Assembly (NCBI GenBank): GCA_973895155.1
Contig: OZ316898.1
Span: 10,873,187 to 10,937,186 of the forward strand
DNA length: 64,000 bases
DNA from: Marsupella aquatica
Lineage: Eukaryota; Plantae; Marchantiophyta
Direction: 5' to 3'
The position numbers and the translations under genes were made by a program. A model generated the notes under the pieces. That model worked only from the letters and a program-made list of their open reading frames with translations, made no database searches and was not told the DNA's origin. Shown one piece after another: positions 6,233-45,115 of this stretch (position 1 is its first letter; every line of letters begins with the position of its first letter).

Positions 6233-7312
6233 TGTCATGATTTTCTCTTAAGTTATAAAAAATTGTTTGTTTTAATATGCTATAGATTATATAAGTAATT
6301 TAGTAGTTAAATTATTAAATTTAGACTTTATTAAACTTCTTTAGCTATATTAACGGACTATAGTAGTTTCACCAATGCATATGAGTAGTTCCATCAACTA
6401 CAATAATATTCACCAATGCATAGTAGGTCCACCAACGCATAGTAGTTCCACCAACGCATGGTAGTTCCACCTACTAAAAGTAGTTTCACCAACTATGAAC
6501 AGTACTAGCACACTCTTAGGTATTAGATGTTTGACACTTGGCCTTCATCCAAGTGCTTGGGCTTGATCCATGCCCTCTTGGTGTGCACTATAAATAAAGT
6601 GGTGAGGTGCACTCTCCCCTCATTCCGCACTGTTTATCATTCAAGGTTGTGAAGCTCTTTTGTGCCTTGAACATAGTAGTGGGCGTCCTTTGGCCCAGAT
6701 AGCAAAGGAATGAGTGGTAGACTTATAGATGGGACCTTAGAGAATAAATTTTCTTTGGGAATATATGGGTGGGGCATTCTTTGGCCCGGATAGCAAAGGA
6801 ATAGGAGAGCCATCATGAATCCAGGAGAGAGAGTTATCCCTGATCTTCACCTTCGTAATTCGTTTTTGATTAGAGTTCATCTTTTAGACAAACCATCTAT
6901 GAGGCAACATCTAACCTATCATTTTGGAGCTCAGTTTGCAACTGCTGTTATGGTTTCTAACGAGCCAATAATATACCCAATGGTGTCGTACTGAAAGGAG
7001 TGGGAGTGCATCATCTTTATCCTTTCTTGAAGTCATGGATCTGAATAGGAGTCCGGATGATATCCCTGTTTTATTTTTTCTTGGAGATATTAGGATCATA
7101 TGTCGTAAGAAAACTAATTTTCGTGATGTGTTGTCCGCTAGTATGGTGAAGTAGGGTTTAACAGTATTTTAGTTTCACCTGAACCTTTCTTAATACCCAC
7201 TACCCTTGTTACTAGAATTATCATTTTGATTTTAGTGTAGAACTTATGAGCATGCAAGGTTAACTTCAAAAGAGCCAACATGCTCTTGCCAGAAAACACG
7301 GTCATCCGGACA
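6233..7312 (+). repeat. 5' LTR of gypsy element
   Basis: 1080 bp, TG...CA, about 97% identical to 11989-13070 by eye; TATAAATA near 6589. Confidence 0.95.
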
Positions 7313-7458
7313 TAAGTGACGACCATACTGGGAAACCACTGGATTTGGAAGTTAGCTTGTGCATGTTTGAGTTCTAATGGATGAAGAGAGATATGGTTTT
7401 GGAACTTTGAATTCTTAACTTGTTTATATTATTAAGTCAAGAGGGAAGAATTGCAATT

Positions 7459-10400
7459 ATGGGAATTGAGATGAATCCAACTGACATGGAGAGGTTTTCA
7501 TCATTGATTGCTGCTTACTTACATGGAATGAAGGAGAAGGAGATGGAGGAGAACAAGAAGAAGGAGTTGCTTGGTAGGACCACGAAGTACCTACACTCGG
7601 TTCTTACCAAGCAAGGAGAATTTGATGGGTGAAATGTAACCAAGTATCTCAAGGGGTACTGGACGGAGGCTACAATTCATAAGATTGATGCAGAAGTTGT
7701 AGTCAAGGAGTTTGTATCTTTAGTAGAACCTGAACTCAAGGGAATTGTTACTACCTTGATAGATGGAGCTATTGGGGAGAAAGCATGGAAGATCTTTGAG
7801 TTGAAGATGAAAAAAGAATTTTAGCTTGAAGATCCAGATCGGGTTACTCAAGCATCTTTCCTTGATTGGGTGGCCGATAGAAGCAAGAAGTTGGGACCTC
7901 AAGAACTGATAAGGGAGTTTACGAAGAAGTTCAATCAGCTTCCTGAGATTGGTTCTGAAGTTATCAAGGTACAGAAGGCTACTTTACTTATCCGAGCTGC
8001 TGATGAGAAACTTCAAGACGAGTTGGAGCTTGCTCTGGAATTGATGAACCCAAGTCGTGGAGCCAGTCCACCAACTTGGGAGGAGATTGAGATTGCTGTG
8101 CTTAGGGTCAGCCAAAAGCATAGAAGAAAGAAGCTAAGTCATGAAGGTGCTCTACATGCGGTTGCACCTGTGACTTCTATGAGGAGAATGGAGAAAATAG
8201 AGTCAACAACTGGTAGGGGTGAGAAAAACATGGACAAAATGGATGAGTTGTCTGAACTCATGAAAAATCTTACCATTCTTGCCACCCAAGCCTTCGAGCA
8301 AATGGGAGGAGGTGCATCAAGACCAGCGTCAAGAGGTGGTCCAGGAGCCGGGAGTTCCATTGGCGGAGCAAGGAGTTGGAATTGTATTTGGTGTGATAGT
8401 AAGGAGCACTCAAGGCGTGAATGTGGGGAGCTTTCTGTTGCTCTGAGAGAGAGAATAGTCAAGTTCATTGATCATGATGGCATAAGAAAGCTTGCTTATC
8501 ATGATTCAGGAGAGCTTATTCCAGTAAACACAAACAAGGGCGGTATGAAGGTGTTGGTGGAGAGAAGAATGACTGAACATCATACTTCAGCCATTGCAGC
8601 AGCTTTTGGAGATCAGGATGAGCATGAAGCAGATATTTACACCCTCTTTGGGAGTTCTTCGTCAACAGAGACAGACAAGAAGAGACTAGCAGAGTTTGTA
8701 AGGAGGAAGTCAGGCTGGAGTGATCCAGTGTTGATCTCTTCTTTCACTGCAGAAGTGGGATCTCTATGGGATTCTATGGTAGAGGAGAAACGAAAGTCGT
8801 CCGAACCTTTGGAAGAACGTGCCAAAGGAAAACAAAAGGTTGAGCCTGGACCCTCTATTTTGCAGCCATCATCAAGAGTCCCAATAAGAGGAGTGTTCGA
8901 TTTGAAGATAGAGGAAGTACAACAAAGGAGCCTACTTCGACTCCTTCATCCTCAAAGGAGATGGAAGTGGTAAAAAAAGAGAAGGTGGAAAAGAAAGGAC
9001 CTGGTTGGGTCCTTGGAAGAGATGTTGAGCAGCACATTGCGTATGATCAAGTTGCTGAGAAGTTTTGGAAAGCGGAGGTGAGCGGAGTCACCAATGAGGA
9101 GTTTTTTGCTTGCATGAACTCCAAGGCTCAAGATGCATTACTTGCAAAGGTGAAACGAAAACGATTTTACAAGGAAGGACCTCATGCCTTGGGAATGGAG
9201 GTTTTTTCTGATGTTGATGAAGATGGAGAAGGTTCAATTGTTTCTCAAGCCAGTGTGGAGTGTGAAGTGTATCAAGTGAATGCGGAGAAGATCCCTAGAC
9301 CACAGATGCTAGGGTCTTCAACAAAGGAAGTTCCTGAACCAAAGATGTCAGGAGTTGAGGTATTGGAGAGGTGGAAACCATTGGCGAAAGCAACAACAGG
9401 ATTTGCAGTGACCCAGGATATGACAAAAATTAGTCATAAAGAGGTGCTCAAGGCCTCACAAAGTGTGTGGGTCATGTGTGCTTCAGCTATGAAGAATCCT
9501 GATTCAGGAGACGACAAGGAGTCCATCTTGGAGCCGTTTTGGGCAAGAACTTGCTCAGTTGTGGAGGTAGAGCTTGTAGGAATGGAGGGCAAAGCTTGAG
9601 CATTGATTGACACAGGATCTGAGATGAATCTAATGTCAAGAAGCATCTATGATCTTGGGCAATGGATGATTGATTGTGATACTCAATGGTCTGTCAACTC
9701 AATCAATCGTTCAAAGAATATGCTTTGGGGAGGATGCCCTGGAGTATCAGTGAAGGTTGGCCATGTGATAGAACCAACTAACATCTTTGTGCATGATAGC
9801 TTGCCCTATGATCTCATTCTAGGGCAGCCTTACATTACTCAAGCTCGAATGGAGTACAAGGTCCTACCAGATGGCACTCATATGGCAAAGGTAAGGAGTC
9901 GGGATGAATTGCGGGTAGATGCAATCAATCAGATGAAAGATTGTAAAGCAACTTCGGAGGTGCGAAGGTTCTTTGGCGCTTGCTTGTTCTATAGGATCTG
10001 GATTCCTCACTTTGCACATATTGCTAATCCTTTGTACGGATTATTGAGGAAGAATGTGCACTTTGTTTGGACAGAGGCACATAAGGAGGCTATGCAAAGG
10101 TTAAAGGAGGCCTTACTTAGCCCCCTTGTTTTACGTCCCTTATGCTATGATGGAAGACCCATCATTGTCACTGTAGATTCAAGTTCTGATGCTGCTGGAT
10201 GGGCGGTGGGGCAGGATGATGAGGAGGGGAGAAGATTTGCAGAAAGGTTTGGAGCTAAGATCTTTTCAGCAAGGCAAAGGCATTACCCTCAAATCAAGCG
10301 AGAGTTGTGGGGAGCAAGGATAGCCTTGTGTCAAGAAAAAGTCTACTTAATTGGAGCACAAGTCATTCTTGAGACTGATTGTTTACCACTTTTAGGGATG

Positions 10401-11935
10401 ATTGCTAACTGTGATACTCCAGACATTGCTATGCTACGTTGGATAGCTTTTATTAGGATAATCAACCCCGAGCTTCGACACATTGCTGGAAAAGATAATC
10501 CAGTAGCAGATATGCTTTCAAGAGCCCGCTATGATCAGAATGAAGTGGAGGCAGTTCAAGTGATGAATGGAGAGTTTGAGGTCTTAACATTTCGAGAGGA
10601 GCTATATTCTGGAGAGTTGCTCTTGATTGGAAGGTACCTTAGTACTCTTCAAAGGCCTATTGAAATGATAGAAGAGAAGTTTCAACAATTACGGAAGAAG
10701 GCTTACAAGTTCATGCTCAAGGATGGTGTTTTATGGAGAAGGTCTTTGAAGAAAGGACATGTTCCTTGTAGAGTTCTTGATACAGATGAAGAGAAGAAGA
10801 AAGTCTTATGGGATTATCATGATGCTGTTGAAGCAGGACATCGAGGAGTTAGAGCTACCTATGAGCGGGTTCAAAGGTGGTACTGGTGGTCAGGCATGTA
10901 TGTGGATGTAAAATCCTATGTTGGATCTTGTGAGAGTTGTCAGTATTACTCTAAAGTTCGGTTTAGAGATGGACTTAATCCCACTAGTCCTTTTTCTTTA
11001 CATTTTTAGTGGGCAGTAGATGTGGTGCACATGCCATGGGAAATTAGGGGGGCAAAGTACCTTGTCCTTGCAAGAGAAGATCTTCTTATGTTGAAGGAAG
11101 GGCTTTAACCTCTAACACTACAGAAGCAGTATGCAGGTTCATACTTGAAGACGTTATAGCACGTCATGGTTATTTTGTGCAAATGAGAGCAGATAGAGGA
11201 GAGCTGAATTCTGAAGAGGCTGCAGAATTTTTTGACCGGTTCAACATCAAGCTCAAACTCACTACTGCCTACAACCCAGAAGGAAATGGAAAGATTGAGC
11301 GAGGGCACCCACCGATAGTGAATGCCTTGGTGAAATTTGGTCGAGGAAAACCATCGCTTTGGCCCAATCTTCTACCATTTGCTCTTTTGGCAGATCGAAT
11401 GACATGCACTACCACAACAGGAATTACGCCTGCCAAATTAGTCTCTGGACATTTGCCTTTGATGCCGATTGAGAAAAATGTTTAGAGTTGGAGGATGATT
11501 GAATGGCAAGATAGAATCTCCCAAGAAAAGTTGCTGGAGCGAAGGATTGAGCACTTTAGCCAGACCAAGGAGAAGATTGAGGAGGCGTTACTAAGGCTAA
11601 AGGAGGCTCGTGAGAAGAATAAGGAACGATTTGACAAGATCCATCGTTTGAGACCAATTCCCATCCAGAATGGAGATTGGGTCTTGATCTATGAGGGAGG
11701 GTTGGAACAGCAACATTCTACTCTGAAGAAGTTTGCACGTCGTTGGAGAGGACCATTTGTGGTGGAGGAGGTTTGTCCTAATGCAACATATGTGGTAAGA
11801 GAACTTGATGGAGCAATTCGTCGCAATTCCTATGCAGGGAAGCAAGTGAAATTGTTTAAACGACGAACTCGATTTGTGACAGAGGAAAAGTTTGAACCCG
11901 ACGACTATGAGGCTTTAGATGAAGAAGACATGTAG
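7459..11935 (+). pseudogene. Gypsy gag-pol (gag, protease, RNase H, integrase; RT core absent)
   Basis: Zinc knuckle CIWCDSKEHSRREC; protease LIDTGSEMN...DLILG; RNase H VTVDSS...KRELWG...ETDC...NPVADMLSR; integrase HHCC, DRG, YNPEGNGKIER and WRGPF. Stops at 7630, 9597, 11007 and 11483, plus frameshifts. Confidence 0.9.
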
Positions 11936-11988
11936 CGATTCTAGGTGTGGTGCATACCGGAGGATGCACATGTTTGGTAGGGGTGATG

Positions 11989-13070
11989 TGTCGTGATTTT
12001 CTTTTAAGTTATAAAAAATTGTTTGTTTTAATATGCTATAGATTATATAAGTAATTTAGTAGTTAAATTATTAAATTTAGACTTTATTAAACTTTTTTAG
12101 CTATATTAACGGACTATAGTAGTTCCACCAATGCATATGAGTAGTTCCACCAACTACAATAATATTCACCAACGCATAGTAGGTCCACCAACGCATAGTA
12201 GTTCCATCAACGCATGGTAGTTCCACCTACTAAAAGTAGTTTCACCAACTATGAACAGTACTAGCACACTCTTAGGTATTAGATGTTTGACACTTGGCCT
12301 TCATCCAAGTGCTTGGGCTTGATCCATGCCCTCTTGGTGTGCACTATAAATAAAGTGGTGAGGGGCACTCTCCCCTCATTCCGCACTGTTTATCATTCAA
12401 GGTTGTGAAGCTCTTTTGTGCCTTGAACATAGTAGTGGGCGTCCTTTGGCCCGGATAGCAAAAGAATGAGTGGTAGACTTATAGATGGGACCTTAGGGAA
12501 TAAAGTTTCTTTGGGAATATAGGGGTGGGGCGTTCTTTGGCCCGGATAGCAAAGGAATAGGAGAGCCATCATGAATCCAGAAGAGAGAGTTATCCCTGAA
12601 TCTTCACCTTCGTAATCCATTTTTGATTAGAGTCCATCTTTTAGACAAACTATCTATGAGATAACATCTAACCTATCATTTTGGAGCTCAGTTTGCAACT
12701 GCTGTTATGGTTTCTAACGAGCCAATAATATACCCAGTGGTGTCGTACCGAGAGGAGTGGGAGTGCATCATCTTTGTCCTTTATTGAAGTCATGGATCTG
12801 AATAGGAGTCCGGATGATATCCCTGTTTCATTTTTTCTTGGAGATATTAGGATCATATGTCGTAAGAAAACTAATTTTTGTGATGTGTTGGTCCGCAAGT
12901 ATGATGAAGTAGGGTTTAACAGTATTTTAGTTTCACCTGAACCTTTCTTAATACCCACTACCTTTGTTACTAGAATTATCATTTTGATTTTAGTGTAGAA
13001 CTTATGAGCATGCAAGGTTAACTTCAAAAGAGCCAACATGCTCTTGCCAGAAAACACGGTCACCCGGACA
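11989..13070 (+). repeat. 3' LTR of gypsy element
   Basis: 1082 bp, TG...CA, preceded by G-rich GGTAGGGGTGATG and followed by TSD ACGT. Confidence 0.95.
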
Positions 13071-13074
13071 ACGT

Positions 13075-16000
13075 CTTTGGGTGTTGGCTCAACTGGGCCA
13101 AAGGTGTGTCTGCTTAGTAGGGAATCTAATTCTCCGTTGATAGCTTTCTGCCATTCAGGCCAATCTGGTCTGTTTTGGCATTCTAAGATGGATATTGGTT
13201 CTGGTGTTTCGTCTGTGATATGTGTTGCCACCATTAATGCAAAAGCATTATCTATTGAAGTAGTATTTCTATCCCACATCGTACCAGTGTGTGCGTAGTG
13301 GATAGAAATCTCTTCATGAGTTGTGGATTCGGTATGATCGACATCAGGTGAAGGTGGTATAGATGAACCGCGCCTTCTTGGTTGTTTATCCTTTGATCCC
13401 AAAGGTCTACCACGTTTGGCACGAGGTTGGGATGTACTTGCTGGCTCACTTGATAATTCGATGTGAGCAGATGCTCTCGCAACTGGAATATGTGAGCGGC
13501 TAACTTGTGATGTATCGACGAAAGCGTCGGGAAGTTCTTCCACAATCTTGTGGAGTTGTAAAATTCTTTGAACTTCTTTCTCCCCTTGATTGGTTCGAAG
13601 GTCTTGCCAAAATGGCGAATGTCTTTCCCACTCCAAAGGTGGTTGTGGGTGTTCAGGGGTTACTAACGGTGGATAAACATGTTCATCAAAATGGCAATCT
13701 AGGAATCTAGATTTAAAGACGTCGCCAGTTGTTGGCTCCATATATCGGATTATGGAAGGAGAGTCGAATCCGATGTATATCCCCAACTGTCGTTGGGGTC
13801 CCATCTTGGTTCGTTTGGGTGGAGTAATGGGGGCCATTACTTGACATCCAAATGAACGAAGATGTGATAGGTCAGGTTTAATACCATTAGCAATTTGGTA
13901 TGGGCTATAGGTATTAAAAGCCGATGGGCGGTATTGAATTAATGCGTTAGCCTGTAATATGGCATGTCCCCATGCTGAGACGGGGTGTTTTGACTGCATT
14001 AGTAGTGGGCGTGCAATTAACTGGAGGCGTTTAATGACCGCTTCAGCTAATCCATTCTAAAAATGCACGTGAGGTACAGGATATTGTACGTCTATGCCAA
14101 GTGATGTGCAAAAATCGTCAAATGTTTTGGATGTGAATTCCCCTGCATTGTCCACCCTGAGTGTCTTAATGGGATGATATGGGAATTGTGCTTTCACGCG
14201 CAAGATTTGCGCCAAAATGCGAGGCATAACCATGTTCCTCGTTGAAAGCAGTGTCACATTTGACCATTTAGTTGATGCGTCGATTAATACCATAAAGTAG
14301 CGAAAAGGTCCGCTTGGAGGGTTAATTGGCCCACAAACATCTGCATGGATGATTTCCAAGAATTTGGGTATTTTAGTGGACAATTTTGATGTCGTGGGCC
14401 TTGTTATTAATTTGCCGCGTGAGCATGCAGTGCATGGGGTGCTCGCTGGAATGTGGTGTGTATTGATTGGAATGCCTCTTGAATTCTTAATGATTTTGGT
14501 TAGCATTGATTGGCCGGGGTGGCCGAGGCGTGCATGCCAGAGCGCATGCAATTCGCTTGTGTTGGCATTGTTATGCAGGCATTCAATATGAGTTACATAA
14601 AACCCGCAAGGATACAAGAAAAGGGTTTCTTTAATGATTTTCCCCGTAGGGGTATTTTCAACCAAGTAGATGACCTCTTGGTCTCTGGTATCGCATGTTT
14701 GGACATGTAGTTCATTTGCTCATATATCTCTAAAACTAAGGAGATTACGAGTTGCGTTCGGGGCGAAAATGGCAGATTCTATGTGTATTTCGGTGCCCTA
14801 CGGGAGTCTAATAGAAGCTGGGCCGAAGCCCTCTTCTATTTGGCTAGGACCATTGATAGTGGTCAGGGACCTACGTGAGGGTGTAATCATGTGGAAAAGG
14901 TGCTTATCCCGAAGGATAGTATGTGTGGTCGCACTGTAAATGATACATATGCTTGGACTATTTAAATCTGGTGTAGTGGAGCTACTTGCCACTAAGTGTG
15001 CCTCGGGTTGGGCGGGTAGGTCTGAGAAGTCTTGGAATGGATCACTAGACTCCATAAACGCCCCGTGGGTTTCACGGGGTGGTGCCCTTGAGGTTTGTCC
15101 ATCCTGGATGGACCGTTGGTATAGTTCCCTAAGGTGTTGCGGGATTCTACAGTTTCTCGCTAGGTGGTTTATCATGCCACATTGATGGCATTTCGGTCGT
15201 TCCCGTTGTTGTCGAGGTTGTGACCAATCGTTTCTATGGTTGTTGTTATATGTTCTACCACCGCCGCGTCCTCCGCGTCTGCCACGTCTGCCTCGTCCTC
15301 CTCGTCCTCCACGTCCTTCTTGTCCTTCTCGTCCACCACGTCCTCTAAAGGTCCGTTGGGAGTTATATTGTGGACGTTGGTTATAGAAACTCCCCTTATT
15401 GTGGGTGTTTCTTCGGTTGCCATTCTTAGTGCGCTTAATGCCTTGCCTTGATGTGGAGGGTTCATCGTTTTCTATGTTATGGGTTTCATTCTGTTGTCCT
15501 GAGGCAGTGTGCCCGCAGGTCATTTTCTTGAGTTTACTAAAAGAAGTTCTTGGTTTCTTTCGGTGACTAGGAGGTGGGCTATGAGCTCGGAGTATTGCCC
15601 GAACTTCATGTTTCGATACTGTGTTGATAGCCACACATTCGATGAATGAAATGTCGACAAGGTCTTCTCTAGCAGATCCTTGTCTGTGACCGGCTCGCCA
15701 CATAGTGCGAGGGTTGATGTTATTCTAAAGAGTTCGCTATTGTAGGCTAAAATTGAGGTAAAGTCCTGGACTCGCAGGTTTAGCTAGTCTTGCCTAGCTT
15801 TAGGTAGTTCGACCAGTTTTTGGTGGTCGAATCGGGTTTGGAGCGCTGTCCATAGTTCACGAGGGGTTGATAGGTGCATGTATTGTCTTTGTAGGAATCT
15901 ATGGATATGGCGTCTAAGGAATACTAGAGCCTTAGATTCGTTGGCTTTAGTTAACGGGTCTGGGTGTGGTTCGCCGGCAAAGATGGGTTGAGCGAGCCCT

Positions 16001-22132: not shown

Positions 22133-23093
22133 ACGCCAACCTCCTCCCCAAGGCTTCCTTTTGTATTTTGTGGCAGGTGACACTATAGCGGACTTATGGC
22201 AAGCTAAGAAGCTATTCTGGTCAGGTGACATTTATGGCGCGACTGAGAAGCCTCTTTTAGCCCAATTTTTGTATGGTCAGCATATTGATGGTTAGATCTA
22301 TGCATTGTGAACCTGGATGGTCAATTATGACACATAGTCACTAAAGTTTTTGAAATACCTCGGGAGTATCTTTCCCAAGCCACTCCACCTGGTAACAAAT
22401 GTGCCAAATTAACACAGAAACGAAACACTTCTCCTCCTGCCAGTTTCAACTGTGGAGTCTAATATTGGTTCAATGAAGTTTTCTTTAAAGGAAGAAAAAT
22501 GAAATACCTAAAACTAACCGGAGTTTATGTCAAAAAATCTCATCAATGTTGATGAGAGTTTTGAGTGAGTCCACACAATTGCACATCAAGACTGTGTGTT
22601 ATGTCACTCCAAACCATGATAAACCAAAACATTTTGATTAAGTCACCAAATGTTATTCTAAATACATATCTGGCTGTCCTATTTTGATATGCAATTGCTC
22701 GGACCCTTCTTGAGTGGCCAGACGTCATTGCTCAATTGGCTGAGCAAGGTTCTGCTCCACCTAATCCGTGGATAATGCTCTAGATACCTCCTACCCTAGA
22801 GGGCTCTAGATACTATCGTAGAGGTGCTTCGGAGTCCATTTTTTTCTCTAACTGTGGCGAACCGGGCGTTTTTGATTCTTCATCTTCTGATGAAGAAACA
22901 TGGTCATGTATTTCATCATGGGAGTTTGTAGCTTTATTAGTAGATGTTTTGGGTACCCTCGGGTTTTTGGGCTCTTTGGTACTTCTGGGGTTTGTCCTTT
23001 GTGTTCTCCTCTTTATTGGGCCTATGGGATCCTGTCCTCTGCTGTTTCAAGGGCCTCGTTTGAATGTCCTTTGTGTTCACTCAGGGTGATGGG

Positions 23094-23373
23094 CAGCGTT
23101 TTTTGTAGTGGCCAAAATTAGCCAAATTCCACCTCCCCCAAAAAGCTTTCGTCACTTTTGGCAAAAATTAGCTAGTATTTTTTCCTTCTGATTAGCCAGT
23201 GTCCCACCTAAGCACAGGCCTCTTTAGCCAGAATCTAATGGTCACCCTTAAATCTAGGGACATCTGAGGGTCAGGAAATTAATCAGATAAGGATTATTTT
23301 GAGCATCTTTTCTTTCACACCCTGAACATTCGCCACTCTGGCGAAAAGCAAAACCCTTAAAAAAAATATGCTG
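23094..23373 (+). mobile_element. hAT-type MITE (280 bp)
   Basis: TIRs CAGCGTTTTTT / AAAAAATATGCTG; perfect 8-bp TSD GTGATGGG at 23086-23093 and 23374-23381. Confidence 0.9.
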
Positions 23374-31229: not shown

Positions 31230-31943
31230 AAGCCCGACATAGCTCCCTCTACCAGTGTATTTTTTAAGGATTTCACTTTTTCGCCAAGGTGGCGAATGTA
31301 AAGTGTGTCAAGGAGAAGATGCTCAAAAGATTTTGTATTCAATTATTTTTCTGACTGTCAGATCTCCCTAGATTTAAGGCTGGCCGTTGGATTCTGGCTA
31401 ATGGGGCCTGGGATTAGGTGGAATACTGGCTAGTGAGACAGCAAAAAAGTAGCTAATTTTAGCCAAAAGTGGCGAAGGATTTTTGGGGAGGTGGAATCTA
31501 GAATTTTCGCCACTAAAAAAAACCCTGCCCTCTACCCAGATTCCTATGCTCTTCCCTACACTCACAAGCATCCTCTAATAAGTGTCAAAATTACCCGAGA
31601 AATTAGAACGTATCATTATCAGAAAAGCAGGGCCGTAGCTTCACTCTACAAATAATTAAGCCCGAAATAGCTCCCTCTACCCAGATTCCTATGCTCTTCC
31701 CTACACTCACAAGCATCCTCTAAGTGCCAAAATTACCAGAGAAATTAGAACCTATCATTACCAGATTAATAGGGCCATAGGTTCACTCTAGGAATAATTA
31801 AGCCCGAAATAGCTCCCTCTACCCAGATCCCTATGCTCTTCCCTACACTCACAAGCATCCTCTAGTGTCAAAATTACCCCAGAAATTAGAACCTATCATT
31901 ACCAGAAAAATAGGGCCATAGCTTCACTCTATGTAATAATTAA
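31230..31943. repeat. Tandem repeat, ~143 bp x3, first unit interrupted by a hAT MITE
   Basis: CCCTCTACCCAGA(T/C)CCTATGCTCTTCCCTACACTCACAAGC recurs at 31528, 31673 and 31815. The unit prefix AAGCCCGA(C/A)ATAGCT also lies at 31230, before the MITE. Confidence 0.92.
31253..31527 (-). mobile_element. hAT-type MITE (275 bp), inverted relative to 23094-23373
   Basis: TIRs CAGTGTATTTTTT / AAAAAAAACCCTG; perfect 8-bp TSD CCCTCTAC at 31245-31252 and 31528-31535. Confidence 0.92.
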
Positions 31944-31985
31944 GTTATGAAGGGTAGAAATGGAACTCAAATTATGTACAGATGA

Positions 31986-34790: not shown

Positions 34791-37494
34791 TCAATCTTTG
34801 ATGCCTTTGTATCCTCCTGCCTCCAGCTGTTGGGCAAGGGAACTATCCCCAGTCTTGATAATACGACCAGCTTCCTGAAATCAATCCATTAGCATGTCAA
34901 TTTCATGCACTGATTGCCACCATCATCCTCAACGTACAAAGGAATTCCAAAAGCGAGGAGCGTACCATGATATGGACGTAATTGGGCTTGATGTAGTCCA
35001 GGAGTCTTTGATAGTGAGTAATCATTAAAACGGCATTATCCGACTTTAAAAGACCATTGACTGCTGATGCTACATCCCTTAGTGCATCCACATCCAAGCC
35101 TGAATCAATCTCATCAAGAATTGCCATATCGGCCTCCAAAACCTGAAGGTCCCCAACAAGTAAACTCGTCAAGTTTTTGACTTCCGGTTGCCAAAACTGC
35201 GATGGAGGGAGAGAGGGGAGAGGGGAGGGTGACAGAAGCAGCGATTTATGCCAATAACAATGATCCTAATATATGAGCAATAGTGAAGTTCCGCTTCATC
35301 CACACCATCGAACATAGTATCACAGCTAACCAATTCCTGAACGAACTTGAGCACCCTAATAAGCAATCAGAATTTCGCAGGTCCAACGAGGAGAAGAGAT
35401 GCACTAAAAGACGTTGATCATGTTGCATTTTGTAGTCTCGCCCTGTAATCTGGATAAGTCCTCAAAACAAGTCTGCTAATTCCGAGAACTATTTAGGACC
35501 TTTCCTACAGCTTTCTTCAGCAACAAAATTAACTTGGCCAATAGTAGAGCAGAGAGGTACTGCAAGGAAAGGAGGACTTTGGTGTGAAGTAAAAGCACCT
35601 ACCGCTAACTGTAAGATCTCGTTCCGTTTCTTTTCACCCCCACTGAAGCCTTCATTGACGTTCCGATCCAGAAATGTTGGGTCCATATTCAAAGCCGCCA
35701 GCTTAGGTGACAAATATCCATAAAACTGCACCACATTCAAGTCAACGACGTCTAAATCACCTGCTTTGATTACTTAGTTCACCGTGGCATTCCGGTGGAG
35801 AAGATTCTACAATACTGGTGGTAACCTTGAAAATCTGAGCGATAGACCGGATTCCAGAAGGTGAAGTATTCATCCAAAGGAATGAACCAAGTCGACCAAT
35901 GTTTTGCTAGTGAGCTGCTGCTATACCTCAAGAGGACCAAATTCAGGAAGGCCAAGGGCAGAACGGCGTGCATTGCATGCCATCCGTAAGAAATCCATAT
36001 TGCTCACTCCTGGGATCTCCACTGGAGATTGAAAACTCAGGAAAAGTCCAGAATGACTCCTCTCTTCGGGCGCTTTCTCAAACAAATTCTCCCCCTTAAA
36101 AGTTGCGGTCCCGCCTGTGACTTCGTAGTCTGGGTGGCCTACAAGAACCTGTATAAATATATATGTGTCAGTAAATTGAACCTGTTTTCATTTGGGATCA
36201 TAAGATGCAGAACTCAATTCATGTACAGTAAGAGAAGGTGGGTGGGCTTGCCTTCGACAACGTGCTTTTCCCCGATCCATTTTTCCCCATAATTGCATGT
36301 ATCTGCAGATCAATCCACCACAGTTTTATCCCATTTGAGGTTACGATGCAAAGTGAATGTAATTGGAAGAAAAGGCCGGTAATTTGAAAAATCATGAATT
36401 CAATCTCAATTCTCATCTCAGATCGGTTCACTTTGAGACAAACAAAGACAAAGTTTACTGTACTCTAGCTCCACGGCGGTGGCAAATTGTATATGGGAAA
36501 CTCTGACCAAAACAACTATTGGGAAGTGAATAGGCAAAGGCACAAGAAACGAGAACAGAGGCACTCCCTTCTCTAAGAGGGAACAACAGACAACCCCTTA
36601 ACCAGAAAGGACAGCGACTGGATGGATGAATTTTTCGGTAGGAGTCCATATGATATTGGAAAGCTTGAACAAAGTGTCTCTGCTCTGCTTGCCCTTGGTG
36701 AACCTCGTTCATGTCCCAATATCAGTGTTCTATTGGCTGCACCACACCCAAAAACGCCTTCGAGATTCCTTTGCATTCGAAGCCTTCCGCTACTCCAGAG
36801 GGTATATGAGAAAACTACTAAGGTGCTAACTAATGGAGAAATGAGGAATTATGAGTTGAATGATAGCTAGTGAAAGAGAGTATTTAAGCCAAGTCTCCAA
36901 ACCGTCGGCACAGCGTCAGCACTGATAAGATTCACTGCCGCAGTCTTCTGGTCATCTTTTTAAACCCCGAAATCAGAATGGATGGGAGACAGAGGAGAGC
37001 ATCAACTACGAACAGTAATTCGAAGACCCCGGAGTCCTCCTATCAAACCAAAAGCAAAATCATCTGCCAATGCAGAAGAAAACAAAACGAGAAATTAAGC
37101 CGTGAATTCAAACTCTCGTAAACACCTCTCCTTGCCGGATGACGAGATCCACGCCTCGCAAAATCTCCTTCCCGGAATCCGCCACGACAGCCGTCAACCC
37201 CTTCACTTCAAGCAGCACTTCTGCAGCCTTGTCTCCATCGAGGGCCGCCGGAGCCTCGACTTCTAGCGTCACCAACGCCGACAGCACCACAGCAGCACCA
37301 CCCCGTCTCCCTTTCCTTGGTGCAGCACCAACACCGGATGTGCACGACAGAGAAGCCTTCAACTTCTTCTGCTGAAAGCCAAAGGGACACACGGCAACCA
37401 TAGCTCCTCGGCCATGGTCCAGACTCGCACTCCACGCTCTATCAGCAGCAGCTACCGATGAAGTGCCCAAGCACGTTGCCAAACTCGTTGCCAT
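34791..37494 (-). CDS. SUFC: Plastid Fe-S cluster assembly ATPase SufC (ABCI6/NAP7), 6 exons
   Basis: Exons 37494-37126, 36302-36252, 36148-35927, 35725-35603, 35142-34966 and 34874-34791, all phase 0. Walker A GKNGSGKST, FQSPVEIPGV, RNVNEGFSGGEKKRNEILQ, ILDEIDSGLDVDAL, ITHYQRLL. Intron 2 is GC-AG. Confidence 0.95.
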
Positions 37495-37707
37495 ATCTCC
37501 GAACTCACTACACCAGCAAACTGGCAAATTCAGACACACAAAGGGACCGAGAGGCGGAGAGAGAAGGGCTCCCTGCGGGAGTCTAATTAATTGATAACGA
37601 GATTGTCGAGCATTCCGGGGATTGGGAAAGATGGCACACTGGAAGATGAGATTTGCTTCAATCTCTCTTGTCGATAACGAAACCGTAGGAGTTGAGATGG
37701 GATCCCT
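37407..37707 (-). repeat. Left arm of inverted duplication (SufC 5' leader + transit-peptide start)
   Basis: Reverse complement aligns to 39921-39941 and 40052-40305. Confidence 0.92.
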
Positions 37708-37766
37708 GCTGCAGGTTACCTCACTGTCGCCTTGCACTAGTTTGCAGTGAATTTTCTCTAAGTGCA

Positions 37767-38310
37767 CACTACCACGAAGGTGTGCACTTAATGACGTTTT
37801 GCACTACTTCATAAGTGCAAACACTTTGAATTGGCACTTAAATCACCTCTGGCTATAAAAGGAGAAGTGTCCAAGACTTCTCCCTTCTTCTCCCTTTTCA
37901 CATTCCTCTTCTTTGCTGTGAGACTTTGCTCCACAATTTGAGGAAAAGATACTAAAAATGGTAACTTGGTGGATGCGTATTTTGTCATGTTGTTATGGCT
38001 AGAGTCGCATTAAGGATTGCAATGGGCCCTCTGTCAGTTGACACTCTCATTACTTCCTAAATTGTACATCCCTGCCCTAAAAGTGATCCCCTACCTCATA
38101 AGTGCAAGCTTTAGTCTAGACAAATGATTTGCACTTACTGATAATTGTAAGTGGAAAGAATTGTGCACTTACCATAATATACAGGGTTATTTTTGTGTTT
38201 ATCGCGCTCTTTTGCACTTTTTACCACAAGGTGCAAAATGGTTCAAAAAGGGCCAATTGGACACTTTGCAATTATCCAGGTTTGCACTTGTGGAGCACTT
38301 ATAGAGACGT
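37767..38310. mobile_element. CACTA-like transposon remnant
   Basis: Starts CACTACCAC; many AAGTGCA/TGCACTT motifs in both orientations; segment 37853-37960 recurs at ~44535-44636. No matching right TIR found. Confidence 0.45.
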
Positions 38311-39920
38311 AAGTGTGTTGTCATCAGGGAAGGTAATTCAAGTAAAGTCAAGACTTGACTGGTGGGGTGTGGACTGGGTAGTCTCATAGTCGATTAGTCT
38401 CGCTAATCTTTAGTGTATTATTCTCTTTGTAAGTTTGCTCACTTTTATGTTCAAAAGTCAGGGCGTGTCAAAGTTCTCTGTAAAACAAATCGTTATGGAC
38501 TGAAACCTTTCAGATGTAAGATTCTTATGGGGCTTGTATTTAGATAGCCCATAACTCTACACGCCCTGGCCATAAAACAGTTTTATTGCGGCCATATCTC
38601 ATTTATGCATTGTTTTGACACGCTCTAATCTGCTGTTTTCTCCTAAGTACTGAGCTTCCAAATCTAAATCTTTTGGCCGGGCTTGAAGAGCAATAATTCA
38701 ATGGCTAGCATAGTACAGGAGTCATGACACTTCAAGCACCCCCTGGCTAGCCTCGGAGGTCTCACTATACTGGAGCCCATCATCACTTGCAATGGTTTGA
38801 GGCCTCAAACACCCTAAATTTAAGAAAAGTAGACCTTTTTAACCCCAAGTCATTTCAAATGTTCAAATCTGGTTTTAAAATAGTATCTTCCTTCATAAGT
38901 TTCTCAATTTTATTCAAAAAATCCTAATGTTCTTTAGCAATAAATGTAAGTATTCATTTAGAACTAATAAATCTACCTGATACTGGTCACACATAATGTG
39001 TCATTTTTGTGAAAATGAGACCCCCAAAAAATCAACCAGTGAAAGTTTATGAACTGTTTTGAGACTAAATGTTATGAACTGTTTGGAGACTAATTCTGGT
39101 GAAAATAGAGCACCGCGGGCCTTAAATGGGTTGTCTTCCCATTAGAGCATTATGGCCCACAATACCCTGTGAACATGAACTTACTATTTTTATAATTTAT
39201 TTATTTATTTATATCCAACAATGCTTACAAACTTTGGCCAAAGCACTCTTTTTACAGTATGAGAGCATCTCAAAGCTAGCAATTTTATGAACCTCAACTC
39301 CCTAGTTACCGGGATTAAGGACACAAAAGTTATGGATTACCAAATTCATAGTCCATAACTTTTTCCCATAAGGATTGGTTCTATGTCATTACCATTAGTC
39401 ACTCACTGTAGAGGTGAAAGGAAAACACAAAAACACAAAAACACATTTGTTGTCACCCTAACCTTTGAGACAACAAATGGTCAACACATGTTAGACCATT
39501 CCTTTGTAATTTCTATCCTTTGACTCCCTAATATATCACACAACGTATATCCCACAACGCCTGTAACTAGTACGTTACCCTATGCAAAGGACACTAACAA
39601 GCGAACAAGGGTTGATCTTGGCTCAACCGCGGCACCTGGGTGTCCCAAACTGGCCCATACACTTTGCGTATTGCTCCTAATTCCCACCAAAAACAGCAAA
39701 TGGATAGAACGATGAAGCTACGTCACAAAGAGGAGACTGCAGCAGCAGAGTGGCAGTCGGTTGCCCCCGCGTTCCGCTTCTGCTTCCACATGTGAACGGC
39801 AATGGAGATTGAATTGGAGAAAAGGACATCCAGCTTCACAGCTTGAGATCATACGACATAGCTCTGTTTTATTGTCTGTCACTCGCAATGCTGCTTGTGC
39901 TTTACTCCCGGGAGTGTACA

Positions 39921-40305
39921 AGGGATCCCATCTCAACTCCTGTCTTCTCGACTGGACTTCTTCACTTGACCCGACCTTCCGTTCCGTTCCGTTCCCTGCC
40001 CCTCTGCTCTGGCTCTGCTCTTTCCTGCTCTGTCTCCGATAGGAGAATCATGAGAGATTGAAGCAAATCTCATGTTCCAGTGGGCCATCTTTCCTAATCC
40101 CCGGAAGGCTCGACAATCTCGAGCTCCCGCAGGAAGCGCATCTCCCTCTACTCACTGCCTGAATTTGCACTCGGTCCCTTTGTGTGCCTGAATTTGCCAT
40201 TTTGCTGGTCTAGTGAGCTCGGAGATATGGCAACGAGCTTGGCCACTTCATCAGTAGCTGCGGCTGATAGAGCTGGATGGGGGGCGAGTCTGGACCATGG
40301 CCGAG
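39921..40305 (+). repeat. Right arm of inverted duplication (SCY1 5' leader + transit-peptide start)
   Basis: Shares AGGGATCCCATCTCAACTCCT, GAGAGATTGAAGCAAATCTCAT...CTCGGTCCCTTTGTGTG.CTGAATTTGCCA.TTTGCTGGT.TAGTGAG.TCGGAGATATGGCAACGAG with the SufC 5' end. Confidence 0.92.
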
Positions 40306-43140
40306 TATTCACCGAGCAGAAGCAGCACGTTGCAGTGCCAAGGAAGGGTGGGTATGGCGATGGAGCAGTGTCCTTGAGGAGGTCCTCTCTGTTCCCTCTT
40401 CTGCGGGAGAACCTAAAGTGGAGTAGTGTCGGGGCCCCGTCATTATCCAGACGAGCAATCGCGTCACCTCGGGGCGCTCTTGCAGGCGACTTGCGCAGAG
40501 AGCGACGGTGGATGTCCGAGGCTTCGTCAACCATGTTCTCCGGCCGGGGCGTTTGGCCAAGGTAGAGCATTCACTCGCAGAAAATTTTGAAGGCGTGTAA
40601 TGCCTTTAAGAGCGGTCATTTTGGTGTGATTTTCAATTTACCATAGCTGCTCCCTTTTATTAAGAAGAGCGGCACTTTGCAGTGGAGAGACTCCGATTTT
40701 CTTTTGTGTGTTCAGTTGTAAGAGCTCAATATTTTGCTTCTTTGCAGCCAGGCGGAGCAGTCAAGTGATTGGCAATTCGATCCATTGGATTTAGGAGAAA
40801 ATGTGACCTCGAGGTTTGAACGTGATTTCGAATCCTTGGTTGCCACGGTACTAGCGGCATTAGGGGGTGGACCAGGAAGGTCTGGAAAATCCACCTCTAC
40901 TAGAGGCACTGCAGGTATGCTTGTGGATTTTCCTTTCGAGTATTGTGATCCGTTATAATTATGAACCTACAGCGACATTGCATTGCAGCTAGTAGTAATA
41001 ATACTTCAATTCCTATTTCTCATATCTCACCGCATGTGACCTTCCGTAATGACACTCTGTGGACTCACGTTAACTCCACGGTGTTTCACTGACAGCTGCA
41101 ATCGAAGACAGCTCCGTTGATTTTGGTGAATTCTTCAAAGGCAATCTCCCAGAAAAGTTCCTCAAAGTGCTTGGACTACTGGTTTTGTCTCGGGTTGGGA
41201 CCTACATTCCGTTACCTGGAGTTAACAGGGAAGCCTTTTCTAGCAGTTTGGATACCAACAGCATTTTAGGAACTTTGGATACCTTCTCAGGTGGAGGTAT
41301 TGGACGGCTGGGAATTAGCTCTCTGGGAATAGTTCCCTACATCAATGCACAGATCGTTTTCCAGCTTCTGGGTACTGTTTTTCCTAAACTGCAAGAATTG
41401 CAAAAAAAGGAGGGGCAAGCTGGGCGGAATAAAGTCAAACAATGGACACGTTATGCATCAGTCGGATTTGCAGTTGTACAGGTAATTTTCCCCGAATGAA
41501 TGTCTGTCGAAAAGGATGGAACATTTCCTGTTCATAGCTTACGCAAGTGTTGAACCTTAGATTTGCGTTCTACAATATATCCAACCTACTCCTTACCTTC
41601 TGTTGATGACCGCTCGAAGACAAACTGTCTAGTGAACACATCCTGTGCTAGAAAGGCCAGGGTTTCCAGTCTTTCGTGTAATCCCAGAACGGTGATGATA
41701 TTCTTGGTATGTATTTTGCAGGCAATTGGCCAGATTACATATATTCGCCCGTATGTGAACGATTTCAGCGTGGAGTGGGTCATATCGTCTGTTGCCCTAC
41801 TTGTATTTGGATCAGCGGTCACAATATTTATCGGTGAAAAACTGACAGATTTCAAGCTGGGGAACGGCACGTCACTTCTGATTTTCACGAATATCGTGTC
41901 ATACTTGCCAGCATCTGTGGGACGAACAGTCGTGCAGGCACTGAATGACAGCAACTATGTGGGGCTCGTTGGCCTCGTCGTTTCTTTCTTCTTATTGGTC
42001 CTTGGTATCGTCTATGTCCAGGTGCGTTCTCCCGACTAACTTCCATATACTTTGTTGTGGTACGCTCTGCTGTTAATCGCATCAGCTTCTAATATGTCGG
42101 GGATTGCAGGAAGCAGAAAGGAAGATCCCAATCAACTATGCCTCCAGATATAGTTCCAGTCGCGGAGGAGGAGGACTTCGCAAAGCAGCATATCTGCCGT
42201 TTAAGGTGCGTGAGTATAGGGATCAATTTTGCATTTGACTAGTCTCATCCGGGATTCAATTTGCGTTGATTTACTGAGAAAGTTTTGGCAATGAAATCAA
42301 CAGGTTAATAGTACTGGAGTCATGCCCATCATATTTTCAACCTCGTTGCTACAAATTCCGTTGTCGTTAGCACGCTTCACTGGCATTGAGGCCTTGAAGA
42401 GCGCAGCCGTGTTATTGTATCCTGGAGGTACGTTGGCACACAACTACCCTTGCTCGCATCTTCTCTTTGTCGTTGCACTTTCCAGAGGCTCACACATTGG
42501 TTACAATTGATCATCTGTGTTTTGGCAGGTCCTCTGTATGTGCCCACAAACGTTCTCTTAATTGGATTCTTCAACTATTTCTATACTTTCCTCCAGCTGG
42601 ATCCTGCTGATCTGAGCGATCAGCTGAAACGTCAAGGAGCCTCCATTCCCGCAGTTCGACCTGGAAAAGCAACCGGGACATACATCACGAATGTGAGCAC
42701 CCAATGCATACTCTTTTTTTTACTTGCTCAGTGGATATACTTGAAAATACAAATCGACAACTGTTTCTATGTTGCGGTCTCAAGTCGATTTCTCTACCGG
42801 ATAATCTGGAATATGCCGGTAGGTAATCCAGAATGTGAGCGATTTATGTGGTGAATCAATCATTCCGAAATTTTTCCTCATGTGTCTTTTGGCACTTCAG
42901 GTACTTGGACGAATATCTGTTCTAGGATCCGCTTTCCTCGGCGTGATGGCAGCTGCGCCATCCTTGGTGGAAGGAGTTACTCATCTGACAGCATTCCGTG
43001 GTTTTGCTGGAACGTCGATCCTGATCTTAGTGGGGTGTGCAACGGACACAGCAAGGAAGGTGCAGGCAGAGCTGATTTCTCAAAAGTACAAGACCATTGA
43101 GTTTTATAATCTTGATGATAACTCGGATGTATTCAGATGA
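40227..43140 (+). CDS. SCY1: Chloroplast preprotein translocase SecY (SCY1), 8 exons
   Basis: Exons 40227-40561, 40748-40914, 41096-41481, 41722-42021, 42110-42205, 42304-42427, 42529-42692 and 42901-43140 join in frame. Motifs AAIEDSSVDFGEFFKG, SLGIVPYINAQIVFQLL, LGNGTSLLIF, YLPFKVNSTGVMPIIF, IPAVRPGKAT, FAGTSILILVG, AELISQKY. Confidence 0.96.
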
Positions 43141-45115
43141 TACTTCAACTCACACACATGTAGACAGAAATAGCTGTTTGTACACTAGAATTTGGCAATG
43201 TAAAGATGATCTTGCCTTCTATTTGAGAGTCGGGCTCGAGAACAGACATCATATCATAGTGTGTTCCATTATCGAATCAAAAGCATACATGATATGCACA
43301 AGCAGAGACTCTTAAATAGCATATTCGAGTCGAAACCTCTGGGAAGTATTCTGTTGTCAATTCCTGCCATTGCTGGGAAGTCCGTGTTCGGCTGAAATCT
43401 GAAGTGAACACGAAGTTCTTACTCAAATGAGGGTTAGATTCGATGCGGAAGGCTCCAGTCTGCAAGAATTTGAGTAAAAGTAGACCCTAAACCCACTTCC
43501 CATATAATTTCTCGACTGTTTCTCTAGTATTGAAGACTGTCGGATCCAATTTGTGTGTTCAGTTTTTCTATTTTTCTATTGGACTTTAGTGAAGGGGAAT
43601 TTTAGCTCATTTTACAGAAAATGAAGACGAACACGACAGTAGATTTAGCACAATTAATGAAGCACCAAAAGTAGAACTGAGAAAGGAGACCAAAGGAAGA
43701 GAGAGCCTATCTGTTCCACACTACGATATGATGTCAGTTCTTGTCGTTCAATTGTCCAATGAACCTCGTACGTAAGTAGACTGGAATCTCTCGTCAAGTT
43801 TAGGTCATTTGGAGGCCTTCTGAAAGTCCCGAGGCTCACCTTCAGAATGTCACACTTCAGGAGAAGTGAGAAGACCAGATGACATGGTGGGTACGTTAAA
43901 ACTAAGTCCTCCCAAAAACTTCCTATCAACACTTCGCGGGTAGTGTATAGAACCAAATCACATTTACAGGCATGAAAAAAACCAGAATGCAGAGATTGGT
44001 TAGTCAGCCACAAGCGTGCCGAAAGGATCAAATCTCAGGCACTTCCGTTCTGAAGGATGATGTTCCCAGAATTGGGACATAGGAGGCAAGGAGAAAAATC
44101 AAGAAGACATGTCTGCAACGGGACCCTGAAGAGATCTAAAAAGCCCCTCCAACGGTGGAATGAAAAAAAGAAAAACAAATGAAACAATGAACGAACGATT
44201 TCATGTGGGGACATAGGACCAAACGAGAACTGGAAGCAACTCACTACACTATCAACAAGGGAATGATATGGAAAGGTGGATTCAATGGAAAACAGAGGGC
44301 ATGCTCGCTTCTCATGTTACCAACTCGCATTATTGCAAGCATAAGGGCATACTTGCCAACAGCACCTCCAAAGAATATGCAACCCCTGTAGACTACAGAA
44401 CCTTCTCTCAGCAGTGTCATGCTCTTTCAGAAGTGCGTTCTTGCCCCAAAGAAGTTTCTTGTTTTCTCTGTTGTCCACTGTTTACTCTCAGACGATATTC
44501 CAGCAAGATGTGCCTTTTAAACCACCACTGTCCATATAAAAGGAGAAGTGTCCAAGACTTTTCTATTTTTCACATTTCTCTCCTCTAGGGTGAGACTTTG
44601 CTCCACAATTTCAGGAAAATGATTCTAAAAATGGTGAAGCCTAGTGGATCCAGGTTTTGTTATGGACAGTGGGGCCGTAGATTTCCAGAAATGAGATTCT
44701 GATGTGACCAGGCTTCTCCGTACTTTGGCTCGGAGCTTCAAGGTGAGGTCGAAAAAGTGAGTACCCGTCAGCAAAACAACTTGGGACTTCAATTGCCTGT
44801 CAACTTCTCCGGGACTTCGAATCGATTACGTGGGACCCAGTCATAACTAAAGCACAACGAGACGACACTTCACATCGCGCTGGTTCAGGGTTCACAGTCC
44901 TGAACCACGAGGACAAAAATATCAAGAAAGATCTGCGCCGAAACGAGACGAGTTTGGGGTGAAGACGAAGGATTCAACACGAAAGCTGAAGGATTGTTTC
45001 ATTTGCGAGGATTTGTAGATATGTTTGATCTCGTCAGAAAGGAAAACAAACGTGGCAACGAGGAAAGCACGGGAAGAGCGGGAGAGCTAGCGACGGTAGC
45101 GGTCAGTCATCAGCC

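What the first reader, a model, noticed from the sequence alone, without database searches (positions are those of the whole stretch)
37407..40305. Two unrelated plastid-protein genes (SufC and SecY), head to head, share one duplicated 5' leader and transit-peptide start
Seen: SufC (minus) starts MATSLATCLGTSSVAAADRA-WSASLDHGR and SCY1 (plus) starts MATSLA----TSSVAAADRAGWGASLDHGR. About 175 nt upstream of the two ATGs also align, and an identical 21-mer lies further up (37687-37707 / 39921-39941). Weaker echoes continue downstream (QQK..AAPRKG vs EQK..AVPRKG). Coding indels are 12 and 3 nt, and at least four substitutions are synonymous (AGT/AGC, TCG/TCA, GCT/GCG, GCG/GCT), as expected if both copies are translated under selection. 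Known: both proteins are nucleus-encoded and plastid-targeted in land plants, and the mature proteins are unrelated. Inference: one gene replaced its promoter, UTR and targeting signal with an inverted copy of its neighbour's. This could couple expression and import of plastid Fe-S assembly and the thylakoid Sec translocon.
Basis: partly seen in the sequence, partly recalled or inferred. Interest (0 to 1): 0.85.

Follow-up and report, generated by a model that had tools for sequence, protein, structure and literature searches.

The report
Neighbouring plastid genes share copied start
Two unrelated chloroplast-protein genes lying head to head (an Fe-S assembly ATPase, SufC, and the thylakoid translocon SecY/SCY1) carry diverged inverted copies of one ~300-base piece holding the end of the 5' leader, the start codon and the first 26-30 codons, so the front of an import signal was copied between two long-established genes; no expression data could be obtained.

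Summary
An inverted repeat (37407-37707 and 39921-40305) covers the last 213 or 306 nt of leader, the ATG and the first 30 or 26 codons of a minus-strand SufC gene and a plus-strand SecY/SCY1 gene. Aligned columns are 94% identical, with about ten indels (blastn E about 1e-61). There are only two copies in the 64-kb window. Both genes look intact and both copies are in frame with their gene. The two coding indels are 12 and 3 nt, and substitutions are mostly synonymous (dN/dS about 0.1, nominal p 0.003-0.04, only six changes).

The best reading is a local inverted duplication of a 5' module, about 6% diverged, so neither very recent nor an assembly artefact.

Not supported:
- Promoter sharing. 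No TSS data were available and the block is short.
- The "echoes" downstream, which are not significant at DNA level.
- A shared whole transit peptide. The rest of each presequence is gene-specific.

Donor and recipient stay unresolved, because no close relative exists in any collection searched. This is a new variant of the known "copy an existing targeting signal" route. The scan's first readers also flagged three other shared transit-peptide modules on other DNA of this genome; these are unchecked.

The parts
37407..37707 (-). Left arm of the inverted duplication: 213 nt of SufC leader (37495-37707), the ATG at 37494 and the first 29-30 codons
   Evidence: 94% identity to the right arm over aligned columns
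39921..40305 (+). Right arm: 306 nt of SecY leader (39921-40226), the ATG at 40227 and the first 26 codons
39953..40045 (+). CT-rich 93-nt stretch with short tandem motifs, present only in the right arm (an insertion there or a deletion in the left arm)
   Evidence: gap list; sequence read
37699..37706 (.). 8-nt perfect palindrome (contains a BamHI site) at the inner end of the left arm; its twin is at 39922-39929 at the inner end of the right arm
   Evidence: post hoc observation
37126..37494 (-). SufC exon 1 (123 codons, GT donor at 37125-37124). An in-frame second ATG (codon 32, 37401-37399) lies two codons past the end of the shared block
   Evidence: end of exon aligns with SufC exon-1 ORFs of other bryophyte-like contigs
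34794..36302 (-). SufC exons 2-6 (about 36302-36252, 36151-35924, 35731-35600, 35145-34963, 34877-34794), collinear with TIGR01978 positions 27-242
40227..40561 (+). SecY/SCY1 exon 1 (111 codons + 2 nt, GT donor at 40562). The 85 codons after the block are open and join in frame to exon 2
   Evidence: the exon-2 peptide matches the moss SecY N-terminal region around the FDPL motif
40748..43140 (+). SecY/SCY1 exons 2 onward (exon 2 40748-40915, exon 3 41096-41481, further exons to the stop at 43138-43140)
   Evidence: PF00344 positions 2-305 covered in order
37708..39920 (.). 2,213-nt spacer between the arms. It is unrelated between the sides, partly repeat-derived and AT-rich in the middle; 39600-39920 is about 50% GC and non-repetitive

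Best explanation
A short segment (about 300-385 bp) from the 5' end of one of two adjacent, divergently oriented plastid-protein genes was copied in inverted orientation onto the 5' end of the other. The segment holds the proximal 5' UTR, the start codon in its context, and the first 26-30 codons, which encode the uncharged Ser/Thr/Ala-rich N-terminal part of a chloroplast transit peptide. SufC and SCY1 therefore now start translation at the same AUG context (identical from -9 to +6). Their precursors share the first 26 residues at 81% identity and then continue into unrelated, basic, gene-specific presequence and mature protein. Both proteins use the general plastid import route, so the swap was tolerated. 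The copies have since diverged by about 6% plus indels. Shown: the duplication, its limits, its in-frame position in two intact genes, and the substitution and indel pattern. Inferred: that both AUGs are used, that the shared peptide takes part in import, and how the copy arose. The direction of transfer is unresolved.
For: There is an inverted repeat with sharp ends at 37407/40305 and 37707/39921, with only two copies in the window. SufC is intact: its exons are collinear with TIGR01978 and with solved SufC chains and have canonical splice sites apart from one GC donor. SecY is intact: PF00344 is covered in order. Its exon 1 reads open from the block's ATG for 111 codons and joins in frame, through a GT-AG intron, to an exon-2 peptide that matches a moss SecY. 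There is no other in-frame ATG that would give SecY a presequence. Coding indels are 12 and 3 nt, whereas leader indels are 93, 13, 9, 6, 4... nt. Of six substitutions in 24 clean codons, 4.5 are synonymous (pS 0.25, pN 0.03, p 0.003-0.04). The 6% divergence with many indels rules out a collapsed or mirrored assembly error.
Against: SufC has a second in-frame ATG in good context two codons after the block, so its protein could start there. The selection signal rests on six substitutions, and could come from the donor copy alone. Genome-wide copy number of the block is unknown. No orthologue is close enough to show the ancestral N-terminus of either gene.
Confidence: 0.65

Rival explanations
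1. The duplication is real, but one copy is only untranslated leader or dead sequence. For example, SufC translation may start at codon 32 (ATG 37401-37399), or its TSS may lie inside or downstream of the block. Only one protein would then carry the peptide.
For: There is an in-frame ATG with purine at -3 and G at +4 two codons after the junction in SufC. This is what an insertion just upstream of an original start codon would leave behind. The dN/dS signal is small and could reflect constraint on one copy only. uATGs differ between the leaders.
Against: Both coding indels keep the frame. Scanning ribosomes would meet the block's AUG first if it is on the mRNA, and its context is identical to that of the SecY copy. 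SufC presequences of other bryophyte-like sequences have about 30-40 residues before the point that aligns with SufC codon 37 here. For SecY no alternative start exists.
Confidence: 0.2
2. The two genes have shared a longer 5' module (60 or more codons) for a long time. The sharply bounded 94% block would then be a later gene-conversion tract between inverted arms, not the limit of the original duplication.
For: The stretches after the block show nominal protein-level similarity around a shared P-R-K-G motif (6-29 of 2000 shuffles reach the score). Close inverted repeats are known substrates for conversion (general knowledge).
Against: DNA after the block is no more similar than codon-shuffled controls. 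The protein test was post hoc, on two low-complexity basic presequences. The ten indels inside the block argue against recent homogenisation.
Confidence: 0.08
3. The block is a dispersed element or comes from a third locus (a captured gene fragment in a transposon, or another plastid gene's 5' module). It would have landed independently in front of both genes.
For: The spacer next to the left arm is repeat-derived and holds a cluster of short motifs like the subterminal repeats of DNA transposons. First readers flagged three other shared transit-peptide modules in this genome (unchecked).
Against: The 64-kb window holds no third copy at DNA or peptide level. No terminal inverted repeats or target-site duplications flank either arm. 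There is no Rfam match and no match in metagenome contigs. Two independent in-frame landings in mirror symmetry 2.2 kb apart are unlikely.
Confidence: 0.05
4. The repeat is an assembly artefact: a mirrored or chimeric join.
For: None specific. Inverted repeats can be created by chimeric long reads.
Against: The arms differ by 16 substitutions and about ten indels, and are separated by 2.2 kb of unique sequence. Each arm continues in frame into a different intact gene.
Confidence: 0.02

Closest known systems
Acquisition of a targeting presequence by duplication of an existing one. Presequences of rice rps11-1, Arabidopsis sdh3 and carrot rps10 were copied from atp2, hsp70 and hsp22 (Kadowaki et al. 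1996 and others, as summarised in PMC2631504).
   Same: An N-terminal targeting sequence of one nuclear gene is found, recognisably at DNA level, at the front of an unrelated organelle-protein gene.
   Different: Those recipients were genes newly transferred from an organelle that had no signal. Here both genes are ancient nuclear genes that already needed a transit peptide. Only the first 26-30 codons plus the proximal UTR are shared, and donor and recipient are immediate head-to-head neighbours.
Plastid rpl32 transferred to the nucleus and fused to the Cu-Zn superoxide dismutase gene in Populus and Bruguiera to gain its transit peptide (PMC4329224).
   Same: A pre-existing chloroplast transit peptide is reused by an unrelated plastid protein.
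   Different: That case is insertion into, and fusion with, a host gene. Here there are two separate genes, each with its own copy, in inverted orientation.
One presequence shared by two proteins through alternative splicing (rps14/sdhB in maize and rice; PMC2631504).
   Same: Two unrelated organelle proteins begin with the same targeting peptide.
   Different: That case has one promoter and one exon used twice. Here the module is physically duplicated and the genes are on opposite strands.
Exon shuffling and upstream alternative starts as sources of new transit peptides (survey in PMC7456531).
   Same: The 5' end of a plastid-protein gene changes through DNA rearrangement rather than point mutation.
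   Different: The shared piece is not a discrete exon: it ends in the middle of exon 1 of both genes. The recipient was presumably plastid-targeted before the event, so this is replacement or extension, not gain of targeting.
Short templated inverted duplications from fold-back or template-switch repair at short palindromes (general knowledge; not looked up here).
   Same: The arms are inverted, short and local, and their inner ends coincide with an 8-nt perfect palindrome.
   Different: A 2.2-kb spacer separates the arms. No junction microhomology could be demonstrated, so the mechanism is inferred only.

Membership tests
SufC, Fe-S cluster assembly ATPase (NCBIfam TIGR01978) | Collinear match of the whole ATPase to the SufC equivalog model, best among ABC ATPases | tested here: met
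   Exons 2-6 match TIGR01978 positions 27-45, 45-110, 117-160, 160-219 and 220-242, always as top hit. Exon 3 matches solved SufC chains at E 1e-18.
SecY/SCY1 translocon subunit (Pfam PF00344) | SecY domain covered in order, plus an N-terminal extension as in plastid SCY1 | tested here: met
   PF00344 positions 2-56, 47-148, 204-267 and 260-305 lie on successive exons. Exon 3 is 72-80% identical to plant SCY1-type fragments. About 120 residues precede the FDPL motif that also precedes the core in a moss SecY.
Targeting-signal acquisition by duplication of an existing signal | Two unrelated genes share a homologous N-terminal presequence at DNA level | tested here: met
Targeting-signal acquisition by duplication of an existing signal | The recipient is a gene recently moved from the organelle that lacked a signal | tested here: not met
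   Both genes have spliced counterparts, with their own N-terminal extensions, on other plant contigs. That both are old nuclear genes in land plants is established knowledge.
Targeting-signal acquisition by duplication of an existing signal | The shared peptide functions in import in both proteins | not testable with these tools
   Composition is compatible (23-27% Ser+Thr, 23-27% Ala, net charge 0), but no import or localisation data exist.
Transposable element or dispersed repeat | More than two copies; terminal repeats and target-site duplication | tested here: not met
   There are two copies only in 64 kb, and no TIR or TSD around either arm. The genome-wide count was not testable.
Bidirectional-promoter gene pair | Divergent genes with starts less than about 1 kb apart sharing one promoter region | tested here: not met
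   The ATGs are 2,733 nt apart and the spacer is largely repeat-derived. TSSs are unknown.
Known structured RNA in the leader | Match to an Rfam family, or a fold better than shuffles | tested here: not met
   No Rfam match at E up to 1. The small hairpin in the identical 22-mer has z-scores of -0.6 and -1.4.

The most novel reading that the evidence does not exclude
This genome may have a recurrent process that moves 5' modules (proximal UTR plus the start of a transit peptide) between plastid-protein genes. Besides this SufC/SCY1 pair, first readers flagged three other candidate cases within about 2.5 Mb: PPO and a hydrolase, a PPR-CBS gene and RPL18, and a transit-peptide exon fused to a MetRS-type domain. 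If these hold, the N-terminal part of transit peptides would behave as an exchangeable cassette in this lineage. The shared leader could also put Fe-S assembly and the thylakoid Sec translocon under common translational or import control.
Probability: 0.12. Interest if true: 0.8.

Novelty: new variant of a known kind. Interest (0 to 1): 0.45.

Why it matters
Transit peptides are thought to evolve mostly by drift, indels and new start sites. Documented copying of an existing signal concerns genes freshly transferred from organelles. Here two essential, ancient, normally single-copy plastid genes share a recently copied leader and presequence start. This implies that the N-terminal part of a transit peptide can be replaced or extended in an established gene without loss of function. 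The pair is a natural experiment on the modularity of transit peptides: the same first 26 residues sit on two different downstream presequences. It also gives a dated example of a short local inverted duplication remodelling a gene's 5' end. The claim remains sequence-only until TSS and protein N-terminus data exist.

Tried and rejected
- Orthologue N-termini to find the donor: SufC exon 1 found only distant exon-1 ORFs (76-80% in the conserved end, unrelated presequences). SecY exon 1 found nothing with the word-based search and nothing with phmmer against 1.84 billion representatives. SecY exon 3 found no relative above 80%.
- Synteny: none of the fetched contigs holds both genes. There is no SecY in the 10 kb upstream of a moss SufC, and no SufC in the 8.5 kb upstream of a seed-plant-like SecY. 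All of these species are distant.
- Metagenome scan with the identical 22-mer: 0 hits.
- The search of earlier findings by sequence: blank, which is uninformative.
- Downstream 'echoes': rejected at DNA level.
- Leader hairpin and Rfam families: nothing.
- hAT-type 8-bp target-site duplication of the palindrome around the spacer: considered, but the spacer ends show no terminal inverted repeat, so it is not claimed.
Exons were searched one by one by reference. Because of this, full-length annotated proteins of this or closely related species could not be reached through the length-limited protein search.
Full report
**What is in the sequence**

Reading 37200-40500 and scanning for inverted repeats shows six collinear inverted blocks between 37407-37707 and 39921-40305. 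They are 77 nt at 92%, 73 nt at 93%, 46 nt at 91%, 28 nt at 93%, 25 nt at 84% and 21 nt at 100%.

A global alignment of the two arms has 251 identical of 267 aligned columns (94%). There are 12 mismatches in 192 leader columns and 4 in 75 coding columns, plus about ten indel events. The largest indel is a 93-nt CT-rich stretch present only in the right arm (39953-40045).

blastn of either arm against the window finds only the partner (E 4e-63 to 5e-61). A peptide-level tblastn finds no third copy. Similarity stops sharply at both ends.

**The genes**

The minus-strand gene is SufC:
- Exon 1 runs from the ATG at 37494 to a GT donor after 37126.
- Exons 2-6 match NCBIfam TIGR01978 positions 27-242 in order, always as the best family.
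- Exon 3 matches solved SufC chains at E 1e-18.
- The exon layout is the same as in a moss-like scaffold, L001.

The plus-strand gene is SecY of the plastid SCY1 type:
- Exon 1 runs from the ATG at 40227 to 40561 (GT at 40562).
- It joins in frame to exon 2 (40748-40915) and exon 3 (41096-41481).
- PF00344 positions 2-305 are covered in order on successive exons.
- Exon 3 is up to 80% identical to plant SCY1-type fragments.
- The exon-2 peptide matches the region before the core of a moss SecY, around a shared FDPL motif.

Both genes look intact.

**What exactly is shared**

The shared block holds these parts:

| Part | SufC copy | SecY copy |
|---|---|---|
| Leader inside the block | 213 nt | 306 nt |
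| ATG context, -9 to +6 | identical in both | identical in both |
| Codons inside the block | 30 | 26 |

The peptides are 21/26 identical. Both are Ser/Thr/Ala-rich with net charge 0, as expected for the N-terminal part of a chloroplast transit peptide (general knowledge).

After the block the two exon-1 sequences are unrelated at DNA level. In 297 of 500 and 385 of 1000 shuffles the score is matched. A protein-level resemblance around a P-R-K-G motif is nominally significant (6-29 of 2000 shuffles). However, the region was picked post hoc and both sequences are basic, low-complexity presequences.

So the shared piece is less than half of either presequence. It is not a discrete exon.

**Are both copies translated?**

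For SecY the case is good:
- The block's ATG is the first in-frame ATG; a stop lies 15 codons upstream.
- The next in-frame Met is near codon 97, which would leave no presequence.
- The 85 codons after the block are open and splice in frame.

For SufC the block's ATG is also the first in-frame ATG, but a second ATG in good context lies two codons past the junction (codon 32).

Evidence for constraint:
- The two coding indels are 12 and 3 nt. Leader indels are 93, 13, 9, 6, 4 nt and smaller.
- In the 24 codons free of alignment ambiguity, 4.5 of 6 substitutions are synonymous (pS 0.25, pN 0.03; p 0.003-0.04 depending on the test).

This is suggestive but rests on six changes, and constraint on one copy alone could produce much of it.

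**Origin and direction**

Divergence of about 6% plus many indels excludes an assembly mirror and means the event is not very recent. As a rough inference it is millions of years old at usual plant neutral rates.

The inner ends of both arms coincide with an 8-nt perfect palindrome (37699-37706 and 39922-39929). This fits a template switch or fold-back at a short palindrome, but it was noticed post hoc and no junction microhomology could be shown.

The 2.2-kb spacer is partly repeat-derived:
- 37838-37989 resembles 44517-44664.
- A short motif is clustered at 37760-38290.
- The last 320 nt before the right arm are about 50% GC and unique.

Direction is unresolved, because the hints conflict:
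- The ATG left two codons after the junction in SufC is what an insertion just upstream of an original start would leave. This favours SufC as recipient.
- SufC presequences of other bryophyte-like sequences have 30-40 residues ahead of the point aligned with SufC codon 37 here. This favours the block being native to SufC.

No orthologue is close enough to decide. The SecY exon-1 peptide has no detectable relative at all. SufC relatives share only the conserved exon end. In the distant species whose contigs could be fetched, the two genes are not neighbours as far as the contigs reach.

**How it most likely works**

Both mRNAs would carry the same proximal leader and initiation context. Both precursors would carry the same first 26 or so residues, followed by gene-specific basic presequence, and would enter through the general TOC/TIC route. 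SufC then joins the stromal SUF system and SCY1 the thylakoid Sec translocon (established knowledge of the families).

Nothing here shows that the block includes a promoter, so co-regulation is not supported. It is also not excluded.

**Comparison with what is known**

Copying an existing targeting signal is documented for genes newly transferred from organelles. Presequences of rice rps11-1, Arabidopsis sdh3 and carrot rps10 were copied from atp2, hsp70 and hsp22, and rps14/sdhB share one presequence by alternative splicing (PMC2631504). rpl32 fused to the Cu-Zn SOD gene in Populus and Bruguiera (PMC4329224). Exon shuffling and upstream starts are listed as sources of transit peptides (PMC7456531).

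This case differs in four ways:
- Both genes are old nuclear genes that already needed a signal.
- The copy is a sub-exon 5' module that includes the UTR.
- The partners are immediate head-to-head neighbours.
- The copy is inverted.

Two full-text searches for a described equivalent found none. I file it as a new variant of a known kind.

**Context from the scan**

Other agents call this genome a liverwort; I did not test that. First readers flagged three more candidate shared transit-peptide modules on other DNA of the same genome: s1-772963, s1-772935 and s1-769225. They are unchecked and lie outside my window, so they only motivate the "novel case".

**Verdict**

- Observation: confirmed.
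- Best explanation (local inverted duplication of a translated 5' module): confidence 0.65.
- Interest: 0.45.

Noticed in passing
window 4700-15700: Nested LTR retrotransposons. A Ty3/gypsy-type element with 1,082-nt LTRs 97% identical (6233-7312 and 11989-13070), carrying RNase H and integrase ORFs (9603-11006), sits inside a copia-type element on the minus strand (RVT_2 at 5337-6089; integrase/gag at 12671-14665).
   Followed up: partly
window 37838-37989 and 44517-44664: A roughly 150-nt dispersed repeat (77-80% identical) that looks like a promoter: a TATA box, then a CT-rich stretch, then an ATG about 90 nt downstream. One copy lies in the spacer next to the left arm on the plus strand, the other downstream of SecY. 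It could drive a plus-strand transcript across the spacer toward SecY.
   Followed up: partly
window 37760-38290: Eight copies, in both orientations, of the 7-mer AAGTGCA within about 530 nt; the whole window holds 24. The pattern resembles subterminal repeats of a DNA transposon or a cluster of binding sites. A second small cluster lies at 16-18 kb.
   Followed up: partly
window 36251-36246 (minus strand): SufC intron 2 appears to use a GC donor (AAG|GCAAGC), not GT. A moss-like SufC fragment reads on into its intron with the same first codon (GCA), so the GC-AG intron may be conserved.
   Followed up: no
window 37495-37767 (minus strand): The SufC reading frame stays open for 91 codons upstream of the ATG, with no in-frame ATG. 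In the right arm the same stretch of sequence is instead a 39-codon uORF in another frame, started by an ATG that the left arm lacks. This is probably chance.
   Followed up: partly
window 31260-31530 vs 23091-23364; 31528-31944: There is a further inverted repeat pair (80% identical) and local tandem duplications (about 90% identical) upstream of the SufC gene. They are unrelated to the block.
   Followed up: no
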